Origin: Octopus sinensis
Lineage: Eukaryota
Assembly (NCBI RefSeq): GCF_006345805.1
Contig: NC_042998.1
Location: 153,202,001-153,266,000, forward strand
Direction: 5' to 3'
DNA length: 64,000 nt
Each line of letters opens with the position of its first letter. The first letter of the stretch is position 1. A program made the position numbers and the translations under genes. Positions 1 through 57,639 of the stretch are shown here, one piece after another. Below the pieces are notes generated by a model, which saw only the letters and a program-made list of their open reading frames with translations, was not told the origin of the DNA and searched no databases.

Positions 1-646
1 TCTGGAACAGTATGATACTTCCGAGGATTGACTACTGTTCTCAGTTGTGGTCACCAACAACAAAGGGCCAACTATCTAAGATAGAATCGCTCCAAGAAAT
101 TTTACCTCATACTTCTCAGAAACGAGGGACCTGGACTATTGGCAAAGACTCAAAACCTTGAGGATGTACTCAATAGAAAGAAGATTTGAGCGATACCGAA
201 TTATATACATTTGGAAAATGATAGAGCAGAAGGTGCCAAACTTTGGTATCAAAACCTACCACTCACTGCGCCACGGAAGACGCTGCCAGCTGCCACCAAT
301 CAACAAAAAGGCTGGCCAGACAGCAAAAACCCTGCGAGAATCAAGTCTGTTGGTTCGAGGAGCACAACTGTTCAACTCCATTCCGGTACATGTCAGAAAT
401 CTATCAGGATGCAGTGTGGAATCATTCAAATTGCAACTGGATAGATACTTAAGCACCATTAGAGATGAACCCCATCTCCCAGGATATACACAACGAGCAC
501 AAACTGACTCAAACTCGCTCCTACACATGTCAAAATTAAGCAGAGAATACAACCTGGCAACCACACCAGACTCTGAGGGTGGAGTCTTCGACTTGGCCTG
601 AGCATGGACTCAAACCCAAATGAAATGAAAAATGAAATGAAATGAA
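1..646 (+). mobile_element. 3' end of a CR1/L2-group non-LTR retrotransposon with (TGAAA)n tail
   Basis: ORF 158-601 reads YSIERRFERYRIIYIWKMIEQKVPN...RGAQLFNSIP...FKLQLDRYL, a typical post-RT C-terminus of CR1/L2-group ORF2. A short-repeat tail (~618-646) abuts mariner sequence. Confidence 0.75.
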
Positions 647-13639: not shown

Positions 13640-15310
13640 TTATTTACATTTGTGAAGAAAAAAAGATACCCTTCCCCAACACTCTAAGAATAAACATAAC
13701 TATGCATCTCCTGGTCTCGATGGTGTTACATACCTACTTTTTAAATGCAGTGGGTACTTTCTTCTAAACCAACTTTCACTATTCTTTCAATTCTGTCTTG
13801 ATAATGGTGTTACTCCAGAGCAGTGGAAAACTGCCAGTGTTATCCCTCTGTTCAAAAAAGGTGACCGCCTGTCAACTATCGCCCATCAGTCTTACTAGCT
13901 ACATCACCAAACTGATGGAATCCTGTGTCAGAGAAACTCTCTGGAACTTCTGGAAGTCTCACAGCCTCATCCAGCCATCACAATTTGGATTTATTCCTAA
14001 TTCCAGCTGCTGTAATCAGCTTATCGAGTTTCTTGAGGACATTACTCGAATCACTGATGGCGGCTCCTGGGTGGATGTCGTTTACCTGGACTTTGCTAAG
14101 GCTTTTAATTCTGTGCCACACAAAAGACTTATGGTGAAACTCTCTGCAATGGGTGTAAGAGATGATCTCTATAACTGGTTGAATTCCTTCATTATCAGCC
14201 AAAAAGAAATTGTCACAGTTCTAGGTCAGCACTCTTCGCCCTATGAGAGGACATCTGGTGAACCACAGGGATCTGTTCTTGGCTCCATTTTATTTGCTGC
14301 ATATGTTAACAACATAGATGCCAACTTAAAGAATGCCACAGTGCTGAAATATGCAGATGACATCAAGCTGTATCTGGAAATAAAGAGGACAGATCCTGTA
14401 CACTATAGATCTTTATTGCAATCAGACCTGGACACAATGCAGCAGTGGATCATGGACTGGCAACTCAAGCTGGCTGTGGACAAATGTACCACCATGCATT
14501 TTGAGAGGAAAAACCCAGCGTCTACTTACTCCCTCCACAACACTAATCTCAAAAAGTCTTCTTGTAAACGTGACCTGGGCATTATTGTTGACAGTGATTT
14601 GTGTTGGACAAAACACATTGCTAAAATTGCCAAGAAGGCTGAAGGTGTCTTAGCATCACTTACTAGGTCCTTTGTCAGCCGCTCTCCGGCTATCTATCTG
14701 AAGCTTTATACAGCTATGGTGCGGCCTCAACTGGAATTTGCATCCCTGGTCTGGAACCCCTATCTTGCCCAGGATATTAATTGTCTGGAAACTGTTCAGT
14801 GACGTGCAGCCAAGAGAATACCCTCCATCAGGCATTTGCCATATTCTGAATGCCTTATTTCCCTAGGCATGGATACATTGAAACTCCGACATCTGGCAGC
14901 TGACTTGGCAGACACCCATAAAATTATTAACCATCTTACAAACAATAACTCTGAGCACCTTTTCAAACTCCACCTATCTAACACCCGTGGACATGTTTAC
15001 AAAGTCAGAAAACAGCATTGCTCCCATGACTTTTGGAAACATTTTTTCACGCTAGGAGTTGCTGAAGCATGGAACAAACTGCTGGCATCAGTTGTTATAT
15101 GTCAGAGCACTGCATCCTTCAAAACTTCCATGCTTCTTGAGATTTGCCAACACTACACCTGATTTTCTCCCCTCCATACACATGCAAGCATGTCTCTGAC
15201 TCATACACTGTTCACTTCCCAGACATTTGTACATTAAGGCACATGTTTTATATGCACTTTTGACAAATTGTGGTGCACCTGAGCACTGTATACTATAATT
15301 TCATTATTAT
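13640..15310 (+). mobile_element. 5'-truncated CR1-clade LINE (RT region and 3' end)
   Basis: ORF 13798-14802 has PISLTS, YLDFAKAFNSVPH, QGSVLGSILF and YADD. It continues in 14836-15162 after a stop or frameshift. Confidence 0.9.
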
Positions 15311-17457: not shown

Positions 17458-17860
17458 TACTCTTTTACTTGTTTCAGTCATTTGACTGTGGCCATGCTGG
17501 AGCACTGCCTTTTAGTTGAGCAAATCAACCCCAGGTCTTATTCTTTGTAAGCCTTGTACTTATTCTATCAGTCATTTTTGCTGAACCGCTAAGTTATAGG
17601 GACGTAAACACACCAGCATTGGTTGTCAAGTGATGTTGTGGGGACAAACACAGACACACAAACATACACACACACATATACATATACATATATACGATGG
17701 GCTTCTTTCAGTTTCTGTCTATCAAATCCACTCACAAGGCTATAGTGGCCCAAGACTATAGTAGAAGACACTTGCCCAAGGTGCCATGCAGTGGGACTGA
17801 ACCCGGAACCATGTTGTTCGTAAGCAAGCTACTTACCACACAACTATTCCTACACCTATG
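17458..17860 (-). mobile_element. tRNA-derived SINE, family A (CATAGGYGYAGGA head, (GAGTAAAA)n-type tail)
   Basis: Full-length homologue of 32405-32781, with an internal CA/TA microsatellite. Confidence 0.85.
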
Positions 17861-17949
17861 CAAATGAAACAACAAAATTTATGTCAAAATAAATTATTTG
17901 ATGTAGCTAAATGTAGTGTTGATATTTCAAAATAAAGTGTGTAAAAGAA

Positions 17950-20331: not shown

Positions 20332-20995
20332 CCAATATATAAGTAAGATATTTTCTATTTAAATTACATATATTTATAATCTGGGTCCTTTTGTTATCCA
20401 AGCCTGATCTAAGGTTTTCCTGACAATCTCATTGACAGTACGTATTCTTATTTAAACTCTTATTCTTTCTCTATTGTTCGCCACTTCAACTCAGAAATAG
20501 CCAACATCATCACCAATTGACTGTTATTTTATAATATAAGCTACTTACAATATTTGTTTCTAATACTACAGTAATTTGTAGGTACTGATATGATAAAATA
20601 ATGTTTTTGAAAAAGAATAAAATGTTTGATTAAATATAGTTTACTTATTATAGGCAGTTACATCAAGGGAGAAAGTTTATTGTGGTGTGTGCGAGAGATT
20701 CGAAATAAAGGCACCTACCTTCTCTTCGCTCTGATGTGATAGCAGCTGCTTCACCCAACCTTAACAACGTGATCACCTGTCTTAACCCCTCGACGACTGG
20801 ACTCGAAAAGGCAGAATGACCCGCTCGCTGCGCACGCGTCACGGCTGCCCCTTCCAGTCAGCCCCAAGTTCCGGTCAGCTCCCCAGCTGCTGACGTCATC
20901 CCACATGCCACCCTGATCTTAAAGATCACAATCTCTCTACTCCATATCGTAGTCCACCATCCAACCGGGAGGGCGCCTTGCGCGTCAAGATCTTC

Positions 20996-23729
20996 TCAAG
21001 CTGGCCACCTCGTTCTCCCCCTCTCCGTCGAAGCGACAATCCTGCGGAGGTCCAAGACGTGTCGTGGCATTCCATCCACGGAGACGTTGTTTCTGGAATT
21101 GATCGCCGTCACCATTCCTCTGCTCCATTGAGACGTACAGCGCGCCTTTGGTGGCTTAACCCAGACTTCCTCCCCTATTTTCACGCAAACGGGTCCCTTC
21201 TCTTCCTCGTGGCCCTCCGGCGCTTTGCTCGGGTGCCTCCATTCATATTTAAATACAGCTCTCTGTGGCACAGATTCCTCAGCTTGTCCGGATCGGGGAG
21301 ACAAGTTGTACCAAAAAACTGCTTCAAGCGTCGAAATGTGCCCTCTTTCCGCTATGGCCTTGACTGTCCGATGGTACCTCTCTACGATCCCGTTACCGCT
21401 CGGCCTATACACTGCTCTGAACAAGCGACGCACCTTCCACGGATCAAGCATAACCCTCAATGCTTCCGAACGAAACGCCACCTCGTCCATCAGCAGAGAC
21501 CTCTCTCTAAAAATATCTCGTTCAAGATCTGCGCGATCTCGTCAGCAATGCCCGTTCTCAACTCCCTCCAAATGGCCAGCTGGCCTGGCCCGCAGTCGAC
21601 CATGGAGAGGTACATTCCCTGATGGTAGTGCGTCATATCCACAGCTAGCCTTTTCCAGTTGTGCTCCACTGAAAGGCTTCCCTGTTCATGCCCACACGGA
21701 GCAGGGTCGATGGACTGACACCTGTCGCAGCTCCCGACCACTTTCCGGATGCTTCTCCTAGTGACGTCAGCATCAATTTTCTTCGCCAGATACAGGGTCC
21801 TGTCCACACCCAGGTGATGCATAGCATGCAGTCTCTTCAGTTCAGAGTCATCTAACCGACACGCCGCAGCTATCCCTTTCCGGGCCTCCTCCGGTTCTTC
21901 CAACCACGCTCTTTTCACCCTTGTCAGTGCGTCCGCCCTGTTTTTCTCCGAAGGCACAAAAACCACGTTCAGCTTCAGTCCGAACTCGGCGATCAATTCA
22001 CCTAGAACTCCTAGACGGTACTTCACTAACATCTCTGCGGCACCTTTCGTCCGCACCCTCCTTTCACCAGTGATCACTGATCCTACCCAGCCAAGCATAG
22101 CGTCCGGATTTCAATCGTGCGCAGCTCCCATTTCAGGGCCAAGTTCACCCCTTTCAGCACCGCGTGTAATTCGGTGACATTGATGTGGTTGAAGTCATCT
22201 GCTTTCTGAAGCCAGGCCACGTCCTCCACCGCAGCACCTTCGATTGCCAACACAACTCCTATCGCTATACTGCATTCCGTCTTGGGCACGTACCAGTTCT
22301 CCCTGACCAGATCTTCTGCTCTCGTCCTCTCTAGGATTTCCTGCATCATCGCCACTGTCCCTTCTCCCACCTTGTCGCCCTAACTCTCCCCCTCCGCTCG
22401 TCTCTTGGTGTAACTGCATGCCGTGCGCAGCCATCCAGCGATCGGGTAGTGACCGACCAACTTCCCACACACCGAGAACAGCTCTCTCCTGCTGATGCTG
22501 GAACTCAGCTCTGGGATTTCATTCCCTCTCCGGAACACCAATTCACCCGATCTATCTCTTCGCAGCTTCAGCCCCAGTGCGGCTCCCCCTTCCATCGAAT
22601 CCAGTGGCTTCGCAATCAGTCCGAACTTCTCCAGATGTCTAACTACCTCGTTGGCTGGCCCTACAGTTTCGTCCACCAAAATGTCGTCAATGTAGGAGCT
22701 GGTGGCCTCTCTAATCTTGCCATCTTTCCCTAGGACGGACTTAAGCACTTCCGCCATGATCTTCGGAGCGGAATTCAGCCTGGTTAAACAGTACGTCCGG
22801 CCTTTGTACCGCACCAGCTGATATCACCACAGTTTGTCGCTCACATGGAGCTGCAAGTATGCCGATTTCAAGTCGACAATCGTCGCTGCCTTGGTCAACT
22901 GTCTCCACACACGTAACGTCTCGCCACAAACGTCTGTTGCCTCACCTCCTGTGTGACACGATATATGCTGGCTTAGCTCCCTGAAGTCCAGCACCGGTCT
23001 GACTTTTCCCTTCGTAGGCTGCACCACCACTATCAGGGGTAGCACTCCGACCGCTACCTCCTCCTCCCAAGGGACAAGGACCCCTTCTTCGATCCACCTC
23101 TCAACCTCGTCCTCAAACTCAACCCTGGCGTGGCCTTTCAGGGTATGCTGGTAACAGCTCACTCTGTTTTTCAGCATCAGGGGCTCATCCTTCCATCTCC
23201 ACTCTATCGTCCACCGCTGACCATCGAACGCCGCCTGAAAGTCTTTGTCCTCGATGGTGTAAGCAGCGGAGTCCCTCGCGGGGCTCTGCTCTCTCTGGTG
23301 ATCCTGACTCGCAGTGCACGACTCCCCCACACTTCCAAACGTGACCTCATCTCCCACAATACTGACGCCACCGAGGCGGTTGATGGCGTCCATCCCCATC
23401 ACCACATCAACCCCATCTATCACGCGTTCAGCCACAATTACGTGCAGCCTTAGCGTTGTGCTGCGCACCACTGTCTCCACCTTGCTGCTGCCCCTGCAAC
23501 GGATTTCGCTGCCGTCAACCACCCGGACACTACTAGCCCTGTTCCATTTCTTTGTCACCCTTGAAGTCACAAGGGTGGTCATGCAGCCTGTATCCACGAG
23601 GGCCCTGAACGTCTTCCCCCTGGCCTCCACGTCAATTAATGGCAGCGTCTCCAATAGCATCTCTACTCGTTTGCGAGGAAAGTTCAAGAGGCAGCAACTT
23701 CCTGCGGTAGTTTCCCTGGTCGCAATCAC
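20996..23729 (-). pseudogene. Pol (PR-RT-RNaseH-IN), fragmented into five ORFs
   Basis: LVDTG (PR); VDLKSAYLQL and YIDD (RT); HAMHH..CDRC zinc finger, LAVD and GNGIVERYHR (IN). Confidence 0.9.
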
Positions 23730-24417
23730 GGGCGATGTGCCCGGTCTGCCTGCATCGATAGCAAACGGGCCCCAGTTGCATACAGTCCCGTGCCATGTGC
23801 GACCCCTGACATCTAAAACACCGACCTGAGAACGGACGGTGTCGTTGCATGGTAGGCTTCTTTACGTCTTTCTCCGGTCGTTGTCCGTCTTTACGCACCG
23901 CCATCGCTATCGCCTTCCGCCCAGAGTGTCGTGTCAACACGCAGACTTGAGTCACAAGTTCGCTCAGTGCCATCTTTTTAATCCCGGGCAATCGTTGTAG
24001 GTGAATCCCTACATCGTCGGGGAACCCATTTACAAACGCCAGTCGCGCTGCTCTCTCCAGCCCTTCTCCTGTAAACCCGGCCAGCATCGCTAACCTTCGA
24101 ACCTCCACCGCGTACTCGTCCACCTGTCCTCCCGTCCATCTGATCGTACCCAGTTTAGCAAAAGCTGTGTATTCACACTCTGTGTAGGCATCCCGCAGAC
24201 GTTGCTCTATCTTTTCCTCGCTCAGGTGTTCCTCCTCGTCCATCTCAAGATATAGCGTCAACGCGCTCCCTTCTAAATACAGTGCCATAAGACTTGCCAC
24301 ATCGCTTATACCTTGCAGTCTTGCCACCAGCCTAATTTTACGAATCCAGGCCACTCTATCGCCTTCACCATTAAAGGGTCTAATGATGTCGCTGGCGATC
24401 CTGATTTTCGCTGCCAT
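23632..24417 (-). CDS. Gag with two CCHC zinc knuckles
   Basis: 261-aa ORF containing CFRCQGSHMARDC and CYRCRQTGHIARDC. Confidence 0.85.
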   Translation of the reverse strand: MAAKIRIASDIIRPFNGEGDRVAWIRKIRLVARLQGISDVASLMALYLEGSALTLYLEMDEEEHLSEEKIEQRLRDAYTECEYTAFAKLGTIRWTGGQVDEYAVEVRRLAMLAGFTGEGLERAARLAFVNGFPDDVGIHLQRLPGIKKMALSELVTQVCVLTRHSGRKAIAMAVRKDGQRPEKDVKKPTMQRHRPFSGRCFRCQGSHMARDCMQLGPVCYRCRQTGHIARDCDQGNYRRKLLPLELSSQTSRDAIGDAAIN

Positions 24418-24440
24418 TGTGTCGACGACTTATATGGATC

Positions 24441-24452
24441 GCCGAAATAGCT
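24441..24452 (-). promoter_or_regulatory. non-canonical primer-binding site complementary to tRNA-Phe nt 1-12
   Basis: Sense strand reads LTR-CA|AGCTATTTCGGC. The + strand GCCGAAATAGCT equals the 5' end of metazoan tRNA-Phe(GAA) as I recall it. Confidence 0.7.
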
Positions 24453-25399
24453 TGTGGTGTGTGCGAGAGATTCGAAATAAAGGCACCTACCTTCTCTTCG
24501 CTCTGTAACGGATCCTTCGACACAGCCCGACCCGAACGCTAGAGATAGCAGCTGCTTCACCCAACCTTAACAACGTGATCACCCATCTTAACCCCTCGAC
24601 GACCGAACTCGAAAAGGCAGAATGACCCGCTCGCTGCGCACGCGTCACGGCTGCCCCTTCCGGTCAGCCCCAAGTTCCAGTCAGCTCCCCAGCTGCTGAT
24701 GTCATCCCACATTTATTATTGTAATGAAGAATTGTATTAAATTTCTACCTCCAACTTTGTTCCTCTTCCAACCCATGATCTCTCTCCCTTTCTCTCTTTA
24801 TGGTGAATGGATGGACCAACCAACAACAAACATGTTATAACCATTACATAGATTATTTCAATTCATCAGAGGCTTTAGGTTTATCTTTTTGTATCAATAT
24901 TAAATTAATACTTTGCTGGATATTGTGTTGTAACTTTATATTTAAAAAATCTTACATATTAATTTATAAGTTTTCATAAGGTCACAAGCATTTTTCATTG
25001 AAAACATCGATTGAAAACAGATATTTCTTATTGAAAACAATTATTAAATGTGTGACACTTTCTTATGTTGTGCATCCAGGGAAATTGCTTTTCTGCTAAG
25101 GCAAAAGGCTAAAGTATTATCTGTGAAGTAAGTGGGACATGGATTGAAAAGAAAATGTACAATTGATGTACTAAATGTACAAAAGCATGGCAAAATTAGT
25201 ATTGGGGTTTTATATCCTTAAAACATTTGGATGTATAATTTAATGAAGCAGAGATAAAAATCAATGTCTTCACAAGTTGTACTTTTTATTTTTATTTTAT
25301 TCCAAAAATGCCCTCTGGCATCATCAACAGTATAACAATCTGACAAGTCATCTTTTAACCACACCACCTCCCCTTTTGAGATTGACATCTGTTAGAAGT

Positions 25400-40476: not shown

Positions 40477-42169
40477 GTAAGTTATTCAAAATATGCATAC
40501 ATTAAAGTTAAATAGAAAGTGTAAGCATATAAACGTGAAGGTTCTTCCACTACAAGTAATAAATCATCAAGCATTAAAAGAATGAAGATTGTAGTACTGA
40601 GTTGAAGTTGCAACAAATGCACCACTTTTCCTAATCACAAGGTTACCCCCAGCTTGTTGTCGGTGCACTCCCACCACTGAGTTATAGCCATCAGCTACAT
40701 CACCTCACACTTACCCTGCACTCACCCACCTGTTAATTGAAGTTCCATATCCTGCCACTTCACCAACCACCCCATCAACCACTAATTGAACAGTAGCATA
40801 CTCCAATTCCATGGTGGTAGAGAGGCTTGACAACTTTGGAAATGACTCATTTCAACCTGGAAAGACCAGGAATGTTGGTTTAGTGATACTAACTGATCCA
40901 AACTTTGCTGACAACATCACTTTTCTATCAAATGAAATCACAGATATCCAGATCATTCTGTCAAAAGGATTGGGCTACACCTCAGTGCCAAGAAAACAGA
41001 ATACATAGTCTCTACTATTCAGGATTGTTGAAGGTGTGCTGTTCAAGCAAGTTTCTTACTTAAAGAATCTTGCATCATTCATGGTGGAATCAAGGAGCAC
41101 AGAAGCTTCACATGAAAGGAATTCAATGATATGTACTGCAACCTCTTTAGACAACTCAAGAAAAGAACATTTATTTGGCAGTAGTCTCATCTGTCCTTCA
41201 AGAATTTAAAAGTTGGGATCATTATTAAGTTCATAATTAAGTTTCTTGATGACTGTTACATTCAGATGCTCAAGATAGATTCTCAATATTGGCTAAATGC
41301 GGAAAGTGATCAATGAATAATTTTAACCAACGAGAGGCAGGAAGATGGTTGTATCTTTGCAGACAAAGCCTGCAATACCCACAGTTGTCAGCTAGGTCAC
41401 CATCTGTGAGTCAGCCCATGAGGAGTTTTACCATAGCTGTCCTTCTGAAGCCAAGGGAGGACATTGGTTGTGTGTCTCCTGATGAACTTATAGCATTGAT
41501 GATGGAACACTATATGTGAGATGTTTACTATCTGATGCAAGCTGTTGTCCATTAATGAGTAGTTGTGATAGGCACAATGGAGTTGGTGGCAGCAATGAAG
41601 TTATAATAATTTATGAATATAATAGATTAACATTTTGAAAATTTTAGGACAATAAAAATAAGTAAAAAGTGAAAATTTTACCAGTGAGTGTGTTACATAA
41701 TAAGGCACAAAAAGAAAATGACTCTCCCCAGACACAACAGAATAGAGTAACACTTATCTATTTATTATAAATTCAGAAAACTCTTTAATAGGCATAATTT
41801 GAAGATTAGTTTTAGTCCCACCCCTAACTTTAAAAAATTTAAGCCCACAAATATACACTATCCAGCAAAGCTAGCTGTTCTTTTAGAAATAGAAATTTGT
41901 GCATACTGAGCAAATACTGTAAGTCTGAGTCAATAATATGCAAAGCATCTGTTAGAGGAACCAATGCAGACAGCACCATCTGCATACAGAAGACAACTTT
42001 AAAGTAAGATATAACAACCATACTACTACATTTAGAAACTGGAACCTATGTAACACCTCAAAGCTCTTCAGTTGTATATGGGATTTGAAAGAGAGGTACA
42101 CCAACTATTCCATCAACTGGAAGATACTAAAAAGAGGCAAGCTCAATGCTAAAAATAGTAGTTGAGGAT

Positions 42170-43858
42170 CCTTATCAACAGAGTCAATTATTTGCCGAGG
42201 CTTTTTCAACTATTTTCAAGCAAGATGATGGTCGTGAAACCCCTCCATTTGATAGATCGGTACCTCCAATGCTTCGATTGGTCATCACGCGGGACGAAGT
42301 CAAACGTGTTATTCAAGGCCTCGATGTCAACAAGGGTCACTGCCCTGACGGCATACACCCACGGGTTATCAAAGCGTTTGCTCTGGTCATCTGCAAGCCC
42401 TTAACACGACTATTCAATATGTCATTGGCGACGGGTGTTATACCTGCAGACTGGAGAACAGCGATAATCTGCCCAATTTTCAAGAAAGGGAGCCGCGAAG
42501 ACCCGCTTAACTACCGACCGGTTTCCCTTACATCAATAATCAGCAAGATGTTCGAAACCATCCTTAAGAAAAGTATGATGCTCCACCTCCTAAACACAGC
42601 CTCTGATTCCCAACACGGCTTCGTGCCGAAGAGATCATGCTTGACCAACTTACTAGTAATGGAAGAATTGGTGACGCGCATCCTCGATGATAGTGATGCT
42701 GTTGACATCGTTTTATTGGACTTTGCCAAAGCTTTTGACTCGGTAAACCACCGCCTACTACTTGTCAAGCTTCAAGCATATAGTTTCCATCCGGATATTG
42801 TACGATGGGTTGGTGCCTTCCTCTCAGATCGCTCCTTCCAAGTTCAAGTTAATGGTTCGCGGTCCGACGTCTCCAGTGCGAGCAGTGGCGTGCCTCAAGG
42901 TTCAGTGCTTGGGCCCTTGTTGTTCTTAGTCTTCATAAATGACTTGCCCAACGACCTCACGCAACACACCCTTCTATTTGCAGACGATATCAAACTGGTC
43001 GCTCCTCGCGGTAGTATAGAGGATCTTCGTCGATGCCTCCACCAAATTTGGAAGTGGTCTAACGATTGGGACCTGTGTCTGAACGTGTCAAAGTGCTGTC
43101 ATCTGCCTGTCGGCTCTACTCCTGCAACTCAACTTGATTTCGAGCCAGGTCGTCTGCTGCTGGAGAGGACCGATCAGGTAAAGGACCTGGGTATCTTGGT
43201 GGATTCCTCCTTTTCGCCTTCGGCCCAGTGCGTCCATGCTGCCAACAAAGCGCGCGGAATTCTGTTTTTGATTCGACGGTCATTCGGAATGCTCACAGCA
43301 ACCATATTCCTACCACTCTATGTCACGCTGGTGAGACCCATATTGGAGTATGGGATTCAAGCCTCTTCTCCTTATCTCCTCAAAGACATACAGCATCTCG
43401 AAAGAGTCCAGAGGCTGGCTACCCGCATGGTTCATGGTCTCAAAAATTTGTCCTACGAAGAAAGGCTGAGGATGCTCGACCTTTATTCTCTTGAAAAACG
43501 CCGCCGCCGTGGTGATCTCATTCTCGCCCACAACATCATAAGCGGGAAGTGTAACCTCTCGAAAGAGCTGTTCTTCACTCCTGCTCCGGAGCGTCGGCTG
43601 CGGGGTCATTCCGAAAAGCTCTACCTGCGACGATTTCATCTCAATCGAAGGAGAGGAGCTTTCTCCGTCCGGGTTGCAGATCCGTGGAACAAGCTGCCAG
43701 ACGAGATGGTGAAGATGCCGACGACCGCTTTGTTCAAGATGCCTGGACCTCAAGTGGCCTGAACTCTTTACATGAACACCACCCTGTACTTAACTCCATG
43801 TCCCCCTACATGGCCTTGCTATTTGCTTTTGACCCAAATTAACTAACTAACTAACTAA
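42170..43858 (+). mobile_element. young 5'-truncated CR1/L2-group LINE with open RT and (CTAA)n tail
   Basis: ORF 42146-43762 has NYRPVSLTS, LDFAKAFDSV, QGSVLGPLLF and FADD; CpG-rich; tail aactaactaactaactaa. The 5' boundary is approximate. Confidence 0.92.
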
Positions 43859-51024: not shown

Positions 51025-52410
51025 TTGTTCAAGATGGAGTCCCCCATCTCTTATTCGCCCGTGACGAGCGAGGATGAATACCCGGCGTTGTCGCCAAGAA
51101 AAAAAGAGGCGTTGTCGCCAAGTAAAAAAGAGGCGTTGTCGCCGAAGAAAAAAGAGGCGGCGTCGCCCAAGAAAATGGAAAAACCAGTACCAGCATCAAC
51201 TCCAGCAAAAAAATTCGCTGAAGTGGCTGGGAAAAAGATCAAAACAATAAATATAGAAAATTTTGAAAAATTTGCAGACTGTGTAAAAAAAGAAGGCACA
51301 GAAGTGACTGTGGCCACAAACATACAAAAACATGACGATATAGAAAAAAAAAGAATAATATATAAAACTTACGACACGACAAAAATGATCCAAAAAATCG
51401 AAGAAAAAAAAATAGAGTTTTGTCTAAAACCTTTTATGGATAAAATAACGTATATAAACAGAGGAAAAAGATACGGCACAGTGGAGGTGCGTTTTACTAC
51501 GGAGGAGATAGCGAAAAAACTATCGATGGAGCCGATCAAAGCAGAAAACATTGTCTTACTACCATTGTATAAAGGAAAAAGGACGTCGAAAATTTCAATG
51601 AACAACATACCGCCAGAGGCAGATGCTGAATGTCTGGTGGCAGCAGTGATGGTAGGTCTGGAGGAAAAAATAAACATCCTCCAGGCCACAGTGGAGGAAG
51701 AGGAGTTTTGGAAAGGGCAGAAAATAGTGATAGCCATTCAGGCGGAGGTGCAAACACTGGAAGAAATTCCAGAAATGGTAAAGATTAGTGAAGACGAGAA
51801 AATAACAGTTTTCGTGGAGGGCAGAAAGCCGAGGTGCTTCGGCTGCGGCAAGAAGGGTCATGTAAGGGCGGAATGCCAACCCCAACCCAAACCGCAGGAA
51901 GCACCTAAGCCAAAAGAAAAAGAAGATAATGTGTCACCAGAAGCAGCGTCGGACGGCCCAGAAGGGAAGACTGAAGGTGTGGAGGTGACGGTGACAGCAG
52001 AACCAGCGGCGGAGGAAAAAAAGAGCGAGGAAAAGATAAATGAGGAGGGGTGGGCAAAAATTACCGGAAAAAAAAAAGAAAAACGGAAACCACCCCTCCC
52101 AGAGTAATTTTAAAAAAAAAAAAAAGAGTCAATGAACTCGTATATGGCCGTAAAGGCAGCAAATAGCAGACTCGGAAACGTGTTGGCAGCCATGGCCAAA
52201 GTGGAGAAGGTAGTGAAAATAAACGACTTTGTAATTTACAGAATAGGCTGGAAGGATTACGGGCGGATAAAGTCAGAATTCTTCCATGACGTAGGCCCAC
52301 TTAGATTGGATGTGACATCTCCACATATATTCGAGGGCCTACGTCAGACTCCCCCACGAGGCCCAGAAAAAGAGTTAGAAGAACAAGAGAAAACCGAACC
52401 ACTGATATAA
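51025..52410 (+). CDS. Tx1-like ORF1, copy 1 (frameshift in A-runs near 52070-52125)
   Basis: CFGCGKKGHVRAEC knuckle; 51025-52107 plus 52132-52410 correspond to the continuous C-terminus of copy 2. Confidence 0.8.
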
Positions 52411-52418
52411 GGTAAGTA

Positions 52419-55400
52419 ATGGATTACATTTATGTTGGTTGTTTGAATGTGCGCGGCCTGGGAGCAGGCTGGAAGCAAGGTCGCTTCCTGCATGATATCA
52501 GGTCACGTAATTTAGATGTTATTGTTGCTACAGAAACCTGGTTAGTGGGGCCAAGAGGTCTACTCCCGCTGTTTCACGGCTACGAGAGTTTTTTCTCTCC
52601 TGGCAGTCCTACTGGCGGAAGTGGGGTGTTGGTCCTAATAAAAAGAAACCGGGTTTCTGAGAAAAAGTTAATTTTTGCAGATCCAGAAGGTAGGCTGGTC
52701 GTCATGGATTTGACGTTCAGTAATGGTAAAGTTATCAGACTGGTTGCAATTTACGCACCCAACCATACAGGGCAAAGTGATTATTTTCGTGAACTAGAAA
52801 ACTTTCTTGGTACTTCGCATTCATTAGTGGTGCTAGGAGACTTTAACACAATTTGCAAAGCGTATGTAGATTGTGTTGGCTCGCGTCCAGATAGAAAAGG
52901 CAACAGTGGCTTCATGGAACTGCTAAGCCGCTTTGAGCTAGCAGATCCTTATAGGCTGGAATTTCCGAACGCTCCATTGTGGACATGGTCAAACAGCGAC
53001 GGATCTTCCAGGTCATATTTAGATAGAATACTAATTAGAAAAGTAGACAGTAAAATAGCTAAGTGTCCACAGTTTTACCCGATCAGCTACAGTGATCATA
53101 AAATGGTCACTTGTAAGCTTGACATAGATAAGGTTAAAAATAGAGGATCCGGTTACTGGAAACTTAATACGTCCCTTTTGGCGATTAAGGAGTACAAAGA
53201 CCGGATTAGGAATATAATTCAGAGGGCACTATCTGGTACCATCATTAATAACAAATGGTGGTACGCCCTCAAACGAGCCATCAAGTTTGAGTCTATAAGA
53301 TATAGCATAGGAGTAGTGGCTAGAGAGGCTAGAAGGGAAACTACTCTAGTTAAGGAATTAGAGGAAGCCATGAAAACTGGCTCTGCGGCTCAGGTGGCGT
53401 CCAAGAGACTGGTGTTAAACCAGCACCTCGAGGCCAAACACATGGGCTGCATTGTCAGGGCTAGAATCCGCCATATGGGATGTGAAGGAATCAACGCCGT
53501 GAGATGGGCCCGAGTGGTGGAAGCTCGGCATGGTAACGATGCCACGATTCGATCTTTGACGAACCAACAAGGTGAGTTGATAAACGAACCCGAGGAGATG
53601 TGTGAGGCCTTTCAGGAGCACTTCGCTCAGCTTTTCGGTGAGTGCGGCGGACTGGATAGGAGGAGGGCCTTTACGGACCTACTCGACGGGCTGCCGCGCT
53701 TATCGGGGCGAGATGCAGAGGGCTGTGAAGGGCCAATCACGCCTGAGGAGGTGGTTGAGGCAATGGCGGACTGCGGCGCGGGCAAGGCGCCGGTTTGGAT
53801 GGTCTACCCTATGAGTTATATAAGAGTATGCCAGACTTGTTCGGGCACCTACTGGCGGAGGTCTATGCGAACTGGCAGCAGAACGGGCTTATACCCAGAT
53901 CTGTGCGCCGGGGAGTAGTGACTCTCGTCAGAAAGGACCCGAGCAAGGGGGAGTGCATTGATAATTTCAGGCCCATCACTCTGCTAAACACAGAGTTGAA
54001 GATTTTGGCCAAAGTGTTATCGAAAAGATTGGCGCGTGTCGCGGATGGTCTGATTGGAGAGGCACAGACATGTGCCGTTCCGGGCAGATCCTTTCAGGAT
54101 AATCTCCATCTAATGCGGTACACTATAGAGAGGTTTAATAGTGATTCTGGCAAGGGTGGGGCACTGGTCCATTTAGACCAATCTAAAGCTTTTGATAGGG
54201 TCGACCATCGTTACCTGGTATCTGCCCTGGCACAGTTCGGGCTGAGCCTTGGCTTCCTCAGGTGGATTATCCAAATTTATGATAACATCGACTCGGTAGT
54301 TTGGGTGAACGGCTTCTTGTCGAAGCCGTTCAAAATCAAACGCTCGGTTCGTCAAGGGTGTCCGCTCTCCCCGCTTTTGTACGTGATGGCTCTTGAGCCA
54401 TTACTGCGAAAACTGAGCGGCATCCCGAGACAGCCAGGTAATGGAAAATCAGTGTCAGCGTACGCGGATGACATCACCATCATCGTAACCGAAATGGACC
54501 ACCTATGTAAAGTAGGCAAGGCCATAGAGGTTTACGAGACGGTGACAGGAGCAAAAGTTAATCGCGAAAAGTCAGTCGGCTTGCAACTCGGCACCTGGAG
54601 AGGCAAGTCGATGCCTCCTGACAGCGTCGTGGGACGTTGGACGGAGGGTCCGATTAAACTGCTAGGGGTCTGGTTCGGTCCAGACCTCCAAATAGAGAAG
54701 AATTGGGGCGAGGTAACGAGCAAGGTGGCTGCAGTAGCCAAGACCTGGTCTTGGCGGTGGCTATCCCTGAAAGGGAGGGCGGAGGTGGCCAATGTGTTTA
54801 TCGCATCGGTTATCACCTACCGCCTTTCCGTCGTTCCTTGCCCTGATTTGTGGTTGATCAAGTTGGAAAGACAGCTCTTCTACTTCTTGTGGAAGGGCGG
54901 GAAACCACTTGTGAAACGCTCTACTTGCTGTCAACAACCGTTAAAGGGTGGGCTAGGGATGCCTTGGCTGATGATGCGCAGACATGCGCTGAGGTTAAGA
55001 CATCTGTGGCTCTACCTGGATGGTGAACGGGTGTGGTCTTCGCTAGCAAAACTGATGTTTCCCAAGTTCACTAGTTTCGGTGGATGGGAAACCTGGCTGA
55101 ATCGTAGATCGAAACTTGGTACTTGGTACATGGAGTGTCGCAAGGCTCTCCTGCTATTCCATCGCTCGGGCAACGCCTGCGGTGGGGGTTCCACCACATT
55201 CTTCTATAGAGGGTTGGTAGAGGCGGAATGTGAAGATACCTTGGGGGAAACCCTAGGTCTCGACGATAATCAGCTGGCCAGTCTGTTCCGACGTACGTTC
55301 GAGCCGAGGACACTGGACAACTTCCAGAAGTCTCTGGCATGGCAATGCTACAGAGGAGCTCTACCTGTTCGGGATAAACTCGCAAGGCACGGTGGCCAAG

Positions 55401-55813
55401 ACAGTCCGATATGTCCAAGATGCGGGCGGGATAGGGAAACTGTCCCGCACGCTATTGTTCATTGTCCGGACGTGTCTGAGGTGTGGGTTTATGCCGAACA
55501 GCTGTTGTCAGGTACACGAAGAGTACAGCTGTCGACTGAGTCGATTACAAAAATTGACCCACCGGATTTCCTCGTGAATGAAGGTAAGTTTCGTTTTCTC
55601 GTTGTAGTAGCAATTGCGAAAGAGGTGATATGGAAGACGAGAATGAAAGGTTTACAGTCAGGCAAGTTCATCTCCGGCCCTGGTTTGATGAATTATTTCA
55701 TCTTTCACCTGAAAAGGAAGATAGGGCTGGAGAGAATATGCCTGACTAGGAGAGTGTATGAAGAACGATGGAAGGATGTAGCACGAAAGTTGCGAGTGAA
55801 AGATACAACATAA
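52419..55813 (+). CDS. Tx1-like ORF2 (APE-RT-zinc finger), copy 1, one 1-nt frameshift at ~53790
   Basis: LNVRGL, ETW, LGDFN, DRIL, SDH; PITLLNTELKIL, QGCPLSPLLY, YADD; CPRCG..HAIVHC. Confidence 0.88.
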
Positions 55814-56284
55814 ATGTAATACCAAGCGCGACCAATAGTATCAGTGGGGAGGCGGGGCTCGTGGGGTCCGAGCTAAACCCGCACCCACTCCACCCGTAAT
55901 GTCTTCCGGTCTGTCCCATCATTTGATTTCTGTCCATTTATTGTAATTCATGAAAATTTTTTAATTCGATTTATTGTAAAAACCCATTCGTGTGTCTGAC
56001 CCCATCATCAGATTGTATTGTCCCATCTTTGTTCGCCCCTTGTGGGTAATAATAAAACAACCTGGAGGAAAGCAATTTGCGTGTATAGTAAGTTATTATA
56101 TTTTGCCATCGTATTTATTCTCTCCGTTATAATCTACTGTGTGTCTACCTGCTTTGTTTATTGCTGTACAACTGTTGAAGTCAGCCTTCGTGCGAGGACT
56201 TCGTGGTGGTGTTCCCCCCTCCATGGGGGAAAAAATATCATTTATCTGGGATTTACCAAGGGCTTGTTAAGCCAGTTGTTCGAG

Positions 56285-57630
56285 ATGGAATCCCCCATCT
56301 CATATTTTCCCGTGACTAGTGAAGAAGAATCTCCGGCGGTGTCGCCAAAGAAAAAAGAGGCGGTGTCGCCAAAGAAAAAAGAGGCGGTGGCGCCAAAGAA
56401 AAAGGAAACCCCTGCACCAGCACCAGCACCAGCGAAAAAATTCTCAGAAGTAGCTGGTAAGAAAATCAAAAAAATAAACGTAGAAGACTTAAAGAAATAT
56501 GTGGACTGTGTTACAAAAGAGGGCACGGAAGTGACAGTGGTCTCAAACGCCCAAAAACATGAGGAAATCGAAAAAAGAAGAATAATCTATAAGACCTTTA
56601 ATACGACAACCAAAATGATACAAAAAATTGAGGAAAAAAAATCGAGAATTGTTTAAAACCATTAATGGACAAGATCACATACATCAACAGAGGAAAGAGA
56701 TACGGCACAGTAGAGGTGCGTTTCACAACAGAGGAGATAGCAAAAAAACTGTCGATGGAGCCAATAAAAGCGGAGAACATTGTTCTCCTCCCCTTGTATA
56801 GAGGAAAAAGAACATCGAAAATCACGATGAATAACATTCCGCCAGAGGCAGATGCCGAATGTCTGGTGGCAGCAGTCATGGTAGGCCTGGAGGAAAAAAT
56901 AAACATCCTCCAGGCCACAGTAGAGGAGGAGGAATTCTGGAAAGGGCAGCGGATAGTAATAGCCATTCAGGCAGAAATTCAAACACTGGAGGAGATTCCA
57001 GAAACCCTAAAAATAAGTGAAGACGATAGAATAACAGTTTTCATTGAGGGCAGAAAGCCGAGGTGCTTCGGCTGCGGCAAGAAGGGTCATGTAAGGGCGG
57101 AATGCCAACCCCAACCCAAACCGCAGGAAGCACCTCAGCCAGGTGAAAAAGAAGATGAAGTGTCACCAGAAGCAGCGCCGGGCGGCCCAGAAGGGACGAC
57201 TGAAGGTGTGGAGGTGACAGAGGCAGCAGAACCAGCGGCAGAGGAAAAAAAGAGCAATGAGGAGGGGTGGTCAAAAATCACCAGAAAAAAAAGAAAAACG
57301 GAAACCACCCCTCCCAGAGTGATCCAAAAGAAGAAAAGAGAATCAATGAACTCATATATGGCCGTTAAGGCATCAAACAACAGACTCGGGAACGTGTTGG
57401 CAGCTATGGCCAAAGTGGAAAAAATAGGAAAAGAGAATGACTATATAGTTTACAGAATAGGCCGGAAGGATTACGGGCGGATAAAGTCCGAATTCTTTCA
57501 TGACGTAGGCCCGCTCAGAATGGATTTAACATCTCCATATATATTCGAGGGCCTACGTCAGACTCCCCCACGAGGCCCAGAAAAAGAGATAAACAAAGAA
57601 GAAAAAGAAAAAACCGAACCACTGATATAA
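56285..57630 (+). CDS. Tx1-like ORF1, copy 2 (1-nt shortfall in the A-run at ~56634-56641)
   Basis: MESPISY start; CCHC knuckle; ends EPLI*. Confidence 0.78.
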
Positions 57631-57639
57631 AGGTAAGTA

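What the first reader, a model, noticed from the sequence alone, without database searches (positions are those of the whole stretch)
24441..24452. LTR retrotransposon apparently primed by the 5'-terminal 12 nt of tRNA-Phe
Seen: right after the 5' LTR's terminal CA the sense strand reads AGCTATTTCGGC, with no TGG, so it cannot bind a tRNA 3'-CCA end. Established (from memory): metazoan tRNA-Phe(GAA) begins GCCGAAAUAGCUCAG. The 12 nt are its exact complement, starting at tRNA nt 1, with nt 12 facing the LTR edge as a primer 3' end would. I find no complement in the LTR, so Tf1-type self-priming is not supported. Inference: minus-strand synthesis is primed by a very short 5' tRNA fragment cut in the D-arm, perhaps by the element's RNase H as in Tf1 primer release. 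Known fragment priming (copia, Ty5) uses tRNA-iMet halves. I do not know of a 12-nt tRNA-Phe 5' primer, but cannot exclude prior description.
Basis: partly seen in the sequence, partly recalled or inferred. Interest (0 to 1): 0.85.

Follow-up and report, generated by a model that had tools for sequence, protein, structure and literature searches.

The report
Retrotransposon primed by tRNA 5′ end
A decayed 4-kb LTR retrotransposon has, exactly where its reverse-transcription primer must bind, the complement of the first 12 bases of tRNA-Phe; all 14 relatives examined carry a 12-base site of the same form there, at least 7 matching known tRNA starts exactly, which points to a priming mode I found no description of.

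Summary
Window 24441-24452 (+ strand GCCGAAATAGCT) directly abuts the 5' LTR of a minus-strand LTR retrotransposon at 20681-24711. It has 259/225-nt LTRs (TG...CA), a 5-bp ATAAA duplication, an intact gag and a decayed pol.

The 12-mer equals nt 1-12 of human and Drosophila tRNA-Phe. There is no TGG-type site and no complement in the LTR.

The decisive evidence is comparative. The element belongs to a large family of compact (about 4.0-4.4 kb) elements, with 727 clusters at E<=1e-30. Hosts include a cephalopod and a crab. All 15 distinct members whose LTR-gag interval I could read carry a 12-nt site at this position.

- AGCTA (tRNA nt 8-12) is invariant, and the 7 acceptor-stem positions take six discrete forms.
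- Three forms match human tRNA-Phe, tRNA-Lys3 and tRNA-Ile(AAU) exactly.
- A fourth form matches a eukaryote-type tRNA-Phe variant.
- Conservation falls to background immediately on the gag side.
- Two young genomic copies with identical LTRs fix the boundary.

Priming by a 12-nt 5'-terminal tRNA fragment is therefore well supported. The nuclease that cuts at nt 12|13 is not established; I lean to the element's RNase H, as in Tf1. I found no earlier description in the searchable literature.

The parts
24712..24716 (.). Target-site duplication ATAAA (sense orientation), upstream copy
   Evidence: Identical to 20676-20680.
24453..24711 (-). 5' LTR, 259 nt, TGTGGGATGAC...CACACACCACA
   Evidence: LTR alignment, blastn of the LTR against the window, boundaries read. 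It is 96.4% identical to the 3' LTR over 225 aligned nt.
24441..24452 (-). Primer-binding site AGCTATTTCGGC, the complement of tRNA-Phe nt 1-12 (+ strand GCCGAAATAGCT)
   Evidence: The same position in 14 relatives carries a 12-mer of the form AGCTA + 7 nt.
23632..24417 (-). gag, intact 261-aa ORF with two CCHC zinc knuckles (motifs RLVARLQ, LYLEG)
   Evidence: 25 homologues at 37-50% identity.
20969..23618 (-). pol (PR, divergent RT, DUF7047, RNase H, IN). It is full length against relatives but broken. There are premature stops at codons 22826-22824 and 22382-22380, and frameshifts near 22101-22089 and 21532-21499.
   Evidence: tblastn with P0132, P0026 and P0125, stop positions, Pfam.
20906..20927 (-). 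Plus-strand primer region: palindrome GATCTTTAAGATC (20915-20927) followed by a purine-rich tract AGGGTGGCA abutting the 3' LTR
   Evidence: The same GATCTTnAGATCA-purine arrangement occurs in L002, L005, L006 and L022.
20681..20905 (-). 3' LTR, 225 nt (34-nt deletion relative to the 5' LTR)
20676..20680 (.). Target-site duplication ATAAA, downstream copy

Best explanation
The 12 nt after the 5' LTR are the minus-strand primer-binding site of a compact LTR retrotransposon family, and the primer is the 5'-terminal 12 nt of a host tRNA. In the window copy that tRNA is tRNA-Phe.

Proposed course of events:
1. Gag, which has two CCHC knuckles, helps melt the acceptor stem and the start of the D stem. 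tRNA nt 1-12 then pair with the PBS. The PBS 3' half (UUUCGGC) has the same sequence as the tRNA's own 3' acceptor strand and displaces it.
2. The tRNA is cut between U12 and C13, leaving a 3'-OH. I think the element's own RNase H most likely does this at the end of the short RNA-RNA duplex, as in Tf1 self-priming. A host nuclease is the alternative.
3. RT extends U12 into U5 and R to make minus-strand strong-stop DNA.
4. Later, plus-strand strong-stop synthesis copies the RNA primer and runs off at tRNA nt 1. This would explain why the PBS is exactly 12 nt and ends at nt 1.

Family members have switched among tRNAs that share U8-A9-G10-C11-U12 (Phe, Lys-UUU, Ile-AAU and others).

Shown: sequence complementarity, its exact position and length, family-wide selective conservation, the discrete tRNA-like states, and the absence of the alternative PBS types. 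Inferred: that priming really occurs from this fragment, the cut site, the nuclease and the run-off step.
For: - Position: the 12-mer abuts an LTR end that is fixed by LTR alignment and a TSD in the window. It does the same in two young genomic copies with 100% identical LTRs. One is L021 from Argonauta hians (TSD TCAGT...ATCAAG|AGCTATTTCGGC). The other is L022 from Petrolisthes manimaculis (TSD TAAAC...ACTACA|AGCTATCTAGGC).
- Recurrence: 15 of 15 distinct elements with a readable LTR-gag interval have AGCTA + 7 nt there.
- Sharp edges: information content is 1.67 bits per column inside the 12 nt, 0.20 in the 25 nt downstream and 0.51 upstream.
- The same Phe 12-mer is kept in elements whose Gag is only 35-50% identical and whose flanks are unalignable.
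- The variable 7 nt take six discrete forms. GCCGAAA (4 elements) equals human and fly tRNA-Phe. GCCCGGA (2) equals human tRNA-Lys3. GGCCGGU (1) equals human tRNA-Ile(AAU).
- GCCUAGA (6 elements) is the start of tRNA-Phe(GAA) genes on IMG/VR contigs. One of these is a eukaryote-type tRNA-Phe; by my reading after removing a 1-nt offset (not a computed figure), it is about 88% identical to the human sequence as I recall it.
- On a rough RT tree the PBS forms are patchy: Phe, Lys and GCCUAGA each appear in at least two clades. The same exact 12-mers therefore recur independently.
- Complementarity stops at nt 12. The base before the PBS is A in 14 of 15 elements, where G would be needed to pair with C13. 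In L021 it is G and could pair, yet that G belongs to the LTR.
- No complement of the PBS is found in the LTR, and there is no TGG site.
- The RNase H DEDD residues, the RT YIDD motif and the IN HHCC/DDE residues are invariant in 24 family Pols, so the enzymes needed are under selection.
Against: - There is no experimental evidence of any kind: no cDNA junction and no small-RNA data.
- No host tRNA was checked. The window and all fetched family loci lack tRNA genes, and the window's host is only guessed to be a cephalopod.
- Two of the six 12-mer forms (GCCUAAA, GCCGGGA) were not matched to any eukaryotic tRNA. GCCUAGA was matched only to tRNA genes on viral-classed contigs, not to a crab tRNA.
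- A 12-nt tRNA fragment with a 3'-OH is not a known abundant species. From memory, described tRF-5a fragments are 14-16 nt.
- Only 15 elements were read out of many hundreds, and most of them were found by looking upstream of gag.
- The window copy is dead, so it says nothing about activity.
Confidence: 0.8

Rival explanations
1. The PBS is the same, but the primer is a ready-made host 5' tRNA fragment. A cellular nuclease that leaves a 3'-OH would make it (RNase P-type 'hyperprocessing' as proposed for copia, RNase Z, or Dicer). The fragment would be recruited as a 12-mer rather than cut in place by the element's RNase H.
For: The invariant UAGCU|CAG context across all six PBS forms could reflect the specificity of a host nuclease. 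In L021 pairing could extend to nt 13, but the LTR boundary still lies at nt 12. That fits a primer of fixed length better than a cut at the end of the duplex. For copia, an RNase P-type cleavage was proposed (Kikuchi et al. 1990, from memory).
Against: From memory, 12-nt tRNA 5' fragments with a 3'-OH are not a described class, and the common tRNA-cutting enzymes (angiogenin, RNase T2) leave cyclic phosphates that cannot prime. Tf1 sets a precedent for an element RNase H that releases an 11-nt 5' primer. The L021 argument rests on a single element.
Confidence: 0.3
2. The 12-mer is a conserved cis-element with another role, and minus-strand synthesis is primed in some other way. Possible roles include packaging or dimerisation, a docking site for whole tRNA or pre-tRNA, or a target of host silencing.
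For: No priming data exist. tRNA and pre-tRNA pairing with PBS regions has been given silencing roles in other systems (PMC13537249).
Against: The site sits exactly at the U5 edge, where the primer 3' end must be. Its length is fixed at 12 and it ends at tRNA nt 1. No other candidate PBS was seen next to the LTR: no TGG site in the window copy, and no LTR complement of the PBS in the four elements tested. The variation tracks real tRNA 5' ends.
Confidence: 0.07
3. Tf1/Tj1-type self-priming: the 5' end of the element's own transcript folds back on the PBS and is cut.
For: The duplex length (11-12 nt) and the use of an RNA 5' end resemble Tf1.
Against: There is no match to the complement with up to 1 mismatch anywhere else in the window. 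The longest exact complement in the LTRs of four elements is 0-5 nt, no better than shuffled LTRs.
Confidence: 0.02
4. A chance resemblance to tRNA-Phe in a decayed element.
For: With up to 1 mismatch, 14 of 100 shuffles of the window give a hit somewhere.
Against: The match is exact at a defined position (about 3e-6). It recurs in 15 of 15 elements, with sharp conservation edges.
Confidence: 0.01

Closest known systems
copia / 1731 / Ty5 / Tca2 'half-tRNA' priming (Pseudoviridae)
   Same: The primer is a 5' portion of a host tRNA, released by an internal cut. The PBS does not begin with TGG and does not pair with the CCA end. The Ty3 review PMC5371799 lists this as a known deviation; the details are from memory (Kikuchi et al. 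1986; Ke et al. 1999).
   Different: In those elements the cut is in the anticodon stem-loop. The fragment is about 39 nt, and the PBS pairs with its internal 3' part (about nt 25-39). The tRNA is mainly initiator Met. Here the cut is in the D stem at 12|13 and the whole 12-nt fragment from nt 1 is paired. The tRNAs are elongators (Phe, Lys, Ile). The elements also have the PR-RT-RH-IN order, not the copia order.
Tf1 / Tf2 / Tj1 self-priming
   Same: The primer is the first 11-12 nt of an RNA molecule, paired over its whole length to a PBS next to U5, and freed by a cut at the end of the duplex. In Tf1 that cut depends on RNase H. The PBS has no TGG (PMC4600332).
   Different: In Tf1 the RNA is the element's own transcript, and the complement lies in the LTR. 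Here no complement exists in the LTR, and the sequences match host tRNA 5' ends.
Conventional tRNA 3'-end priming (retroviruses, Ty1, Ty3, gypsy)
   Same: A host tRNA is used, the PBS lies directly 3' of U5, and lineages switch among tRNA species.
   Different: Those PBS types pair with the 3' terminal 8-18 nt, including CCA (so the PBS starts TGG), and no cut is needed. Here the opposite end of the tRNA is used and a cut is obligatory.
Ty3/gypsy-type LTR retrotransposons (Metaviridae) as a structural class
   Same: LTRs with TG...CA, a 5-bp TSD, gag with CCHC knuckles, pol order PR-RT-RNase H-IN, and an IN with H2C2 and DDE.
   Different: The family is very compact (about 4.0-4.4 kb). Its RT scores below the Pfam RVT_1 cut-off. 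It gives no RT_RNaseH hit, while a gypsy fragment in the same window scores 1.9e-25. Its RNase H is of the RVT_3/RNase_H type and is preceded by DUF7047. The nearest solved INs are retroviral, with MMTV at 2e-16.

Membership tests
LTR retrotransposon (generic) | Two direct long terminal repeats with TG...CA ends, flanked by a short target-site duplication | tested here: met
   LTRs of 259 and 225 nt at 96.4% identity, TGTGG...CCACA, TSD ATAAA.
LTR retrotransposon (generic) | gag and pol (PR, RT, RNase H, IN) between the LTRs | tested here: met
   gag is intact. pol is full length against relatives but has 2 premature stops and 2 frameshifts. Relatives have intact pol of 884-987 aa.
LTR retrotransposon (generic) | Purine-rich plus-strand primer tract abutting the 3' LTR | tested here: inconclusive
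   AGGGTGGCA in the window; AGGGGGGGA, AGAGGGCG and AGAGAGGC in relatives. These are short, and their function was not tested.
Ty3/gypsy (Metaviridae) | pol domain order PR-RT-RNase H-IN | tested here: met
   Pfam positions along L008, L007 and L004 Pol.
Ty3/gypsy (Metaviridae) | RT and RNase H that group with gypsy-type profiles and clades | tested here: inconclusive
   RVT_1 is below the cut-off (17-21 bits against 29.6). There is no RT_RNaseH or RT_RNaseH_2 hit, and the RNase H hits are RVT_3. No phylogeny with reference RTs could be made.
BEL/Pao (Belpaoviridae) | Pao-type peptidase (Peptidase_A17) and BEL gag/pol DUF domains | tested here: not met
   No such Pfam hits at E<=0.1. The PR hits are gag-asp_proteas, RVP and Asp_protease_2.
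Ty1/copia half-tRNA-primed elements | pol order PR-IN-RT-RNase H | tested here: not met
   IN lies C-terminal to RT and RNase H.
Ty1/copia half-tRNA-primed elements | PBS complementary to the anticodon-stem region of tRNA-iMet (or Arg) | tested here: not met
   The PBS pairs with nt 1-12 of tRNA-Phe.
Tf1-type self-primed elements | 5' end of the transcript (in the LTR) complementary to the PBS | tested here: not met
Conventional tRNA 3'-end PBS | PBS begins TGG and pairs with ...CCA-3' | tested here: not met
   In the window there is no TGG between the LTR end and the gag ATG. In none of the 15 elements does the site abutting the LTR begin with TGG.
tRNA 5'-fragment-primed family (proposed here) | 12 nt complementary to tRNA nt 1-12 immediately after the 5' LTR | tested here: met
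   15 of 15 elements. Identity to known tRNAs was verified for three of the six forms.
tRNA 5'-fragment-primed family (proposed here) | Strong-stop cDNA covalently joined to tRNA nt 12 | not testable with these tools
   Needs wet-lab work or raw cDNA and small-RNA data.

The most novel reading that the evidence does not exclude
A whole, widespread lineage of very compact LTR retrotransposons of aquatic invertebrates (cephalopod, crab and many unidentified hosts) starts reverse transcription from a 12-nt 5'-terminal tRNA fragment. The fragment is cut in the D stem by the element's own RNase H. This would be a fourth priming strategy, beside 3'-end tRNA, half-tRNA and self-priming. The lineage switches primers only among tRNAs that share U8-A9-G10-C11-U12, and standard PBS finders do not see the site.
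Probability: 0.5. Interest if true: 0.88.

Novelty: new variant of a known kind. Interest (0 to 1): 0.8.

Why it matters
- Priming of minus-strand synthesis is one of the few steps where retroelements show qualitatively different solutions. The review I read lists three departures from the standard 3'-end tRNA primer: the bipartite PBS of Ty1 and Ty3, the copia half-tRNA, and Tf1's tRNA-independent priming. A primer made of the first 12 nt of a tRNA would add a new one. It would sit mechanistically between Tf1 self-priming and copia half-tRNA priming.
- It gives a concrete, testable function for very short 5' tRNA fragments. It also predicts a nuclease activity that cuts tRNA at 12|13 and leaves a 3'-OH.
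- PBS annotation by LTRdigest and LTR_FINDER, as I recall those tools, looks for tRNA 3' ends. If so, this abundant family (727 clusters at E<=1e-30) is probably annotated as lacking a PBS.
- The family itself is unusual enough to deserve phylogenetic placement. It is about 4 kb, with a divergent RT, a cellular or retroviral-type RNase H behind DUF7047, and a retrovirus-like IN.

Tried and rejected
- Internal deletion. I first thought the element was deleted, because it is 4 kb and has no RVT_1 hit. tblastn showed a full-length pol, and the relatives are all about 4 kb.
- Apparent exceptions. L004/L005 and L006/L007 at first seemed to lack the site. In L005 it lies 190 nt upstream of gag. In L006/L007 the gene caller's GTG start was wrong, and the site sits just before the true ATG. 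The 'CGCTATTTATAA' that I considered as a variant PBS is U5 sequence.
- Uninformative loci. L003 and L013 are gag-like ORFs on large contigs of one sample. They have no recognisable LTR or PBS and look like decayed copies. L018 and L019 lack the region. L020 is an unrelated RT on an archaeal contig (27% identity).
- Collection scans. IMG/VR holds no family member, by Gag or by Pol profile. JGI metagenomes gave 3 loci. GTDB genomes gave 3 contaminant contigs in one MAG.
- tRNA genes. None were found in the window or in loci L001-L022, so no host tRNA could be read.
- Other complementarity. I looked in the window copy for further pairing to tRNA-Phe, of the bipartite-PBS kind. In U5-leader and pol-end/U3 there were only 7-mers.
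- RNA fold of U5-PBS-leader: z = -1.97, which is not informative.
- Gag NJ tree: unreliable, because automatic ORF picking took Pol starts in three loci. I replaced it with an RT-based tree, which has no bootstrap and is only suggestive.
- Literature. Seven full-text searches for a tRNA 5'-end PBS, for DUF7047 and for the six PBS strings returned no transposon paper. Every hit for the PBS strings that I could place was a probe or primer against a tRNA. Older subscription papers and Repbase Reports are not covered.

Full report
**Observation**

The + strand at 24441-24452 reads GCCGAAATAGCT. The element lies on the minus strand, so the sense strand reads ...CACACACCACA|AGCTATTTCGGC|GATCC...

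Aligning the two repeats and reading the junctions gives this layout:

| Feature | Window coordinates |
|---|---|
| 5' LTR (259 nt) | 24453-24711 |
| 3' LTR (225 nt) | 20681-20905 |
| LTR termini | TGTGG...CCACA |
| Target-site duplication ATAAA | 24712-24716 and 20676-20680 |

The 12-mer therefore starts at the first base after the LTR. Between it and the gag ATG (24417) there is no TGG other than the ATGG of the start codon.

**tRNA identity**

Human tRNA-Phe begins GCCGAAATAGCTCAGTTGGGAGA (primer list in PMC2175372). The Drosophila tRNA-Phe 5' probe is the complement of the same 25 nt (PMC7038984).

The host's own tRNA could not be read. The window has no tRNA gene.

**Anatomy of the window copy**

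The element spans 20681-24711 (4031 nt).

- gag (23632-24417) is an intact 261-aa ORF with two CCHC knuckles.
- pol is not deleted. tblastn with three relatives covers residues 5-875 of 922.
- pol is broken by two premature stops (codons at 22826 and 22382) and two frameshifts (near 22101-22089 and 21532-21499).
- The LTRs are 96.4% identical over the aligned part, and the 3' LTR has a 34-nt deletion.

This is an old, dead copy whose PBS happens to be intact. It is the only copy of the family in the window, and there is no solo LTR.

**The family**

- Gag has 25 homologues at 37-50% identity.
- An intact Pol from a relative has at least 636 homologues at E<=1e-10. Nearly all sit on contigs of 3-4.8 kb.
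- A full scan of 1.84 billion representatives with the Argonauta Pol finds 727 clusters at E<=1e-30.
- Named hosts are the cephalopod Argonauta hians and the porcelain crab Petrolisthes manimaculis. The rest are metagenome or run assemblies of unknown hosts.
- Family Pols are 884-987 aa, ordered PR, divergent RT, DUF7047, RNase H (RVT_3/RNase_H type), IN (H2C2 + rve).
- The catalytic residues of all four enzymes are invariant in 24 sequences.
- Genomic copies measure 4407 nt (Argonauta) and 4213 nt (Petrolisthes), with 100% identical LTRs and 5-bp duplications.

**The comparative test**

I read the LTR-gag interval of every family locus that contains it: 14 distinct elements besides the window. 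All 15 have, at the same place, a 12-mer of the form AGCTA + 7 nt.

In the three copies with both LTRs the 12-mer abuts the LTR end exactly. In L005 the LTR start and plus-strand primer region are also recognisable. In the others the preceding bases have the family's LTR-end look (ACA, ATA, AGA or AAA).

Information content is 1.67 bits per column in the 12 positions. It is 0.51 in the 25 upstream columns, almost all of it in the last six LTR bases. It is 0.20 in the 25 downstream columns.

| Part of the PBS (sense strand) | Pairs with tRNA | Variation |
|---|---|---|
| First five bases, AGCTA | U12, C11, G10, A9, U8 | invariant |
| Last three bases | nt 1-3 | GGC or GCC |
| Four bases between | nt 4-7 | variable |

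As tRNA 5' ends, the six forms are:

| tRNA nt 1-7 | Elements | Match |
|---|---|---|
| GCCGAAA | 4 | human and fly tRNA-Phe |
| GCCCGGA | 2 | human tRNA-Lys3, GCCCGGATAGCTCAGTCG |
| GGCCGGU | 1 | human tRNA-Ile(AAU) (PMC11724295) |
| GCCUAGA | 6, including the crab copy | start of tRNA-Phe(GAA) genes on IMG/VR contigs |
| GCCUAAA | 1 | only phage tRNA-Thr(UGU) genes |
| GCCGGGA | 1 | not placed |

One of the GCCUAGA genes is a eukaryote-type tRNA-Phe. After removing a 1-nt offset in the comparison, I read it as about 88% identical to the human sequence as I recall it; the tool did not compute that figure.

On a rough neighbour-joining tree of the RT region, the Phe, Lys and GCCUAGA forms each occur in at least two separate clades (no bootstrap). 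The same exact 12-mers therefore recur in distant members. That is what matching to a small set of host tRNAs predicts, and what drift of a cis-motif does not.

**Alternatives**

- Self-priming of the Tf1/Tj1 kind needs the complement of the PBS at the transcript 5' end (PMC4600332). There is no second match with up to one mismatch in the whole window. The longest exact complement in the LTRs of four elements is 0-5 nt, no better than shuffled LTRs.
- A conventional site is excluded, because there is no TGG.
- Pairing does not extend beyond nt 12. The last LTR base is A in 14 of 15 elements, where G would be needed opposite C13. In the Argonauta copy it is G, but the 3' LTR and the duplication show that this G is LTR sequence.
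- No further complementarity to tRNA-Phe of 8 nt or more exists in the U5-leader or in the pol-end/U3 region of the window copy.

**Mechanism**

Shown:
- the complementarity, its position and its fixed length;
- its selective conservation and its tRNA-like states;
- intact RNase H, RT and IN motifs in the family.

From established knowledge:
- a primer must offer a 3'-OH at the U5 edge, so a tRNA bound by nt 1-12 must be cut after nt 12;
- RNase H, RNase P/Z and RNase III-type cuts leave a 3'-OH, whereas angiogenin or T2-type cuts do not;
- in Tf1 an 11-nt 5' RNA paired to the PBS is released in an RNase H-dependent way.

Inference:
- the element's RNase H makes the cut (I lean to this, at roughly 45 against 30 for a host nuclease);
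- Gag's knuckles help unwind the acceptor stem;
- plus-strand strong-stop synthesis runs off at tRNA nt 1, which would explain the exact 12-nt length;
- only tRNAs with A9 are used. From memory, nt 1-12 of these tRNAs carry only m2G10, which still pairs, whereas m1G9 in other tRNAs would block pairing.

**Comparison with known systems**

The site works most like a hybrid of copia-type fragment priming and Tf1 self-priming. From the first it takes a host tRNA 5' piece. From the second it takes the first 11-12 nt of an RNA, fully paired. It is a member of neither group (see the membership table).

As a retroelement it has the gypsy-type gene order, but it scores poorly against gypsy profiles. 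A gypsy fragment 2 kb away in the same window scores 1.9e-25 on RT_RNaseH_2. The family's nearest solved integrases are retroviral. I could not place it phylogenetically.

**Novelty**

Seven full-text searches found no transposon paper that describes a PBS complementary to a tRNA 5' end, mentions DUF7047, or prints any of the six PBS strings. Every hit for the strings that I could place is a probe or primer against a tRNA.

A 2017 review lists only bipartite PBS, half-tRNA and tRNA-independent priming as departures from the retroviral scheme (PMC5371799).

The library lacks most older subscription papers and Repbase Reports, so an earlier description cannot be excluded.

**Limits**

- There are no experimental data.
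- No host tRNA sets were read.
- Only 15 elements were read out of hundreds.
- Two PBS forms remain unassigned.
- The host of the window is only suggested to be a cephalopod or other mollusc. The element's Pol is 56% identical to the Argonauta copy and groups with it, and a LINE in the window is 58% identical to an Argonauta protein.

**Handling**

Element sequence was read and searched in pieces only. Temporary files in the scratch folder were deleted.

Noticed in passing
window 32783-32888 (-), with 17575-17864, 32493-32785, 33756-33973: A full-length U6 snRNA gene (110 bits). It lies next to a sequence repeated three times in the window at 72-87% identity, so it may be a U6-associated repeat or U6-derived retro-copies.
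   Followed up: no
window 25438-27800 (-): A fragment of an unrelated, ordinary Ty3/gypsy element (RT_RNaseH_2 at 1.9e-25, YxxLPFG-type RT motif). It lies only about 0.7 kb beyond the studied element. By coincidence one of its ORFs is also 261 aa.
   Followed up: partly
window 51025-60566 (+): Two tandem copies of a LINE-type retrotransposon (APE endonuclease + RVT_1 + zf-RVT; 499-aa ORFs at 52419-53918 and 57640-59139). The best named relative is an Argonauta hians protein at 58% identity, which hints that the window comes from a cephalopod or other mollusc.
   Followed up: partly
window 13798-14802 (+) and 42146-43762 (+): Two further reverse-transcriptase ORFs (RVT_1 at about 1e-31 and 1e-33). 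No host protein-coding gene was recognised among the ORFs I examined, and the window looks like a nest of retroelements.
   Followed up: no
window 20915-20927 (-); also L002, L005, L006, L022 just upstream of the 3' LTR: A palindrome GATCTT(n)AAGATC immediately 5' of the purine tract is conserved across distant family members. It may be a hairpin that positions plus-strand priming.
   Followed up: no
window 24473-24479 (-): U5 contains TATTTCG, a 7-nt copy of the PBS core, 27 nt upstream of the PBS. It could be chance or a remnant.
   Followed up: no
family Pol, e.g. L008:1116-3884; window 22380-22814 for DUF7047: The family's RNase H is of the cellular/retroviral type (motifs DAS, NVAELEA, TDS, NKAD; Pfam RVT_3/RNase_H). 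It sits behind a conserved DUF7047. This is reminiscent of the connection domain plus acquired RNase H of retroviruses. The nearest solved integrase is MMTV.
   Followed up: partly
L042:2329-2403 (IMG/VR contig of 134 kb): A eukaryote-type tRNA-Phe(GAA) gene that starts GCCTAGATAGCT. It sits among other tRNA genes on a contig classed as viral.
   Followed up: partly
L017-L019 (contigs CAYLZS010000363, ...154, ...196): Three contigs of a 'Granulosicoccaceae bacterium' MAG are animal-type LTR retrotransposons of this family. This is eukaryotic contamination of the bin.
   Followed up: no
hits P0363, P0372, P0374, P0378, P0382: Proteins of about 1340-1420 aa match only the PR-RT-DUF7047 part (query residues 4-555) at 36-38% identity. 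They may belong to a sister lineage with a different C-terminal half.
   Followed up: no
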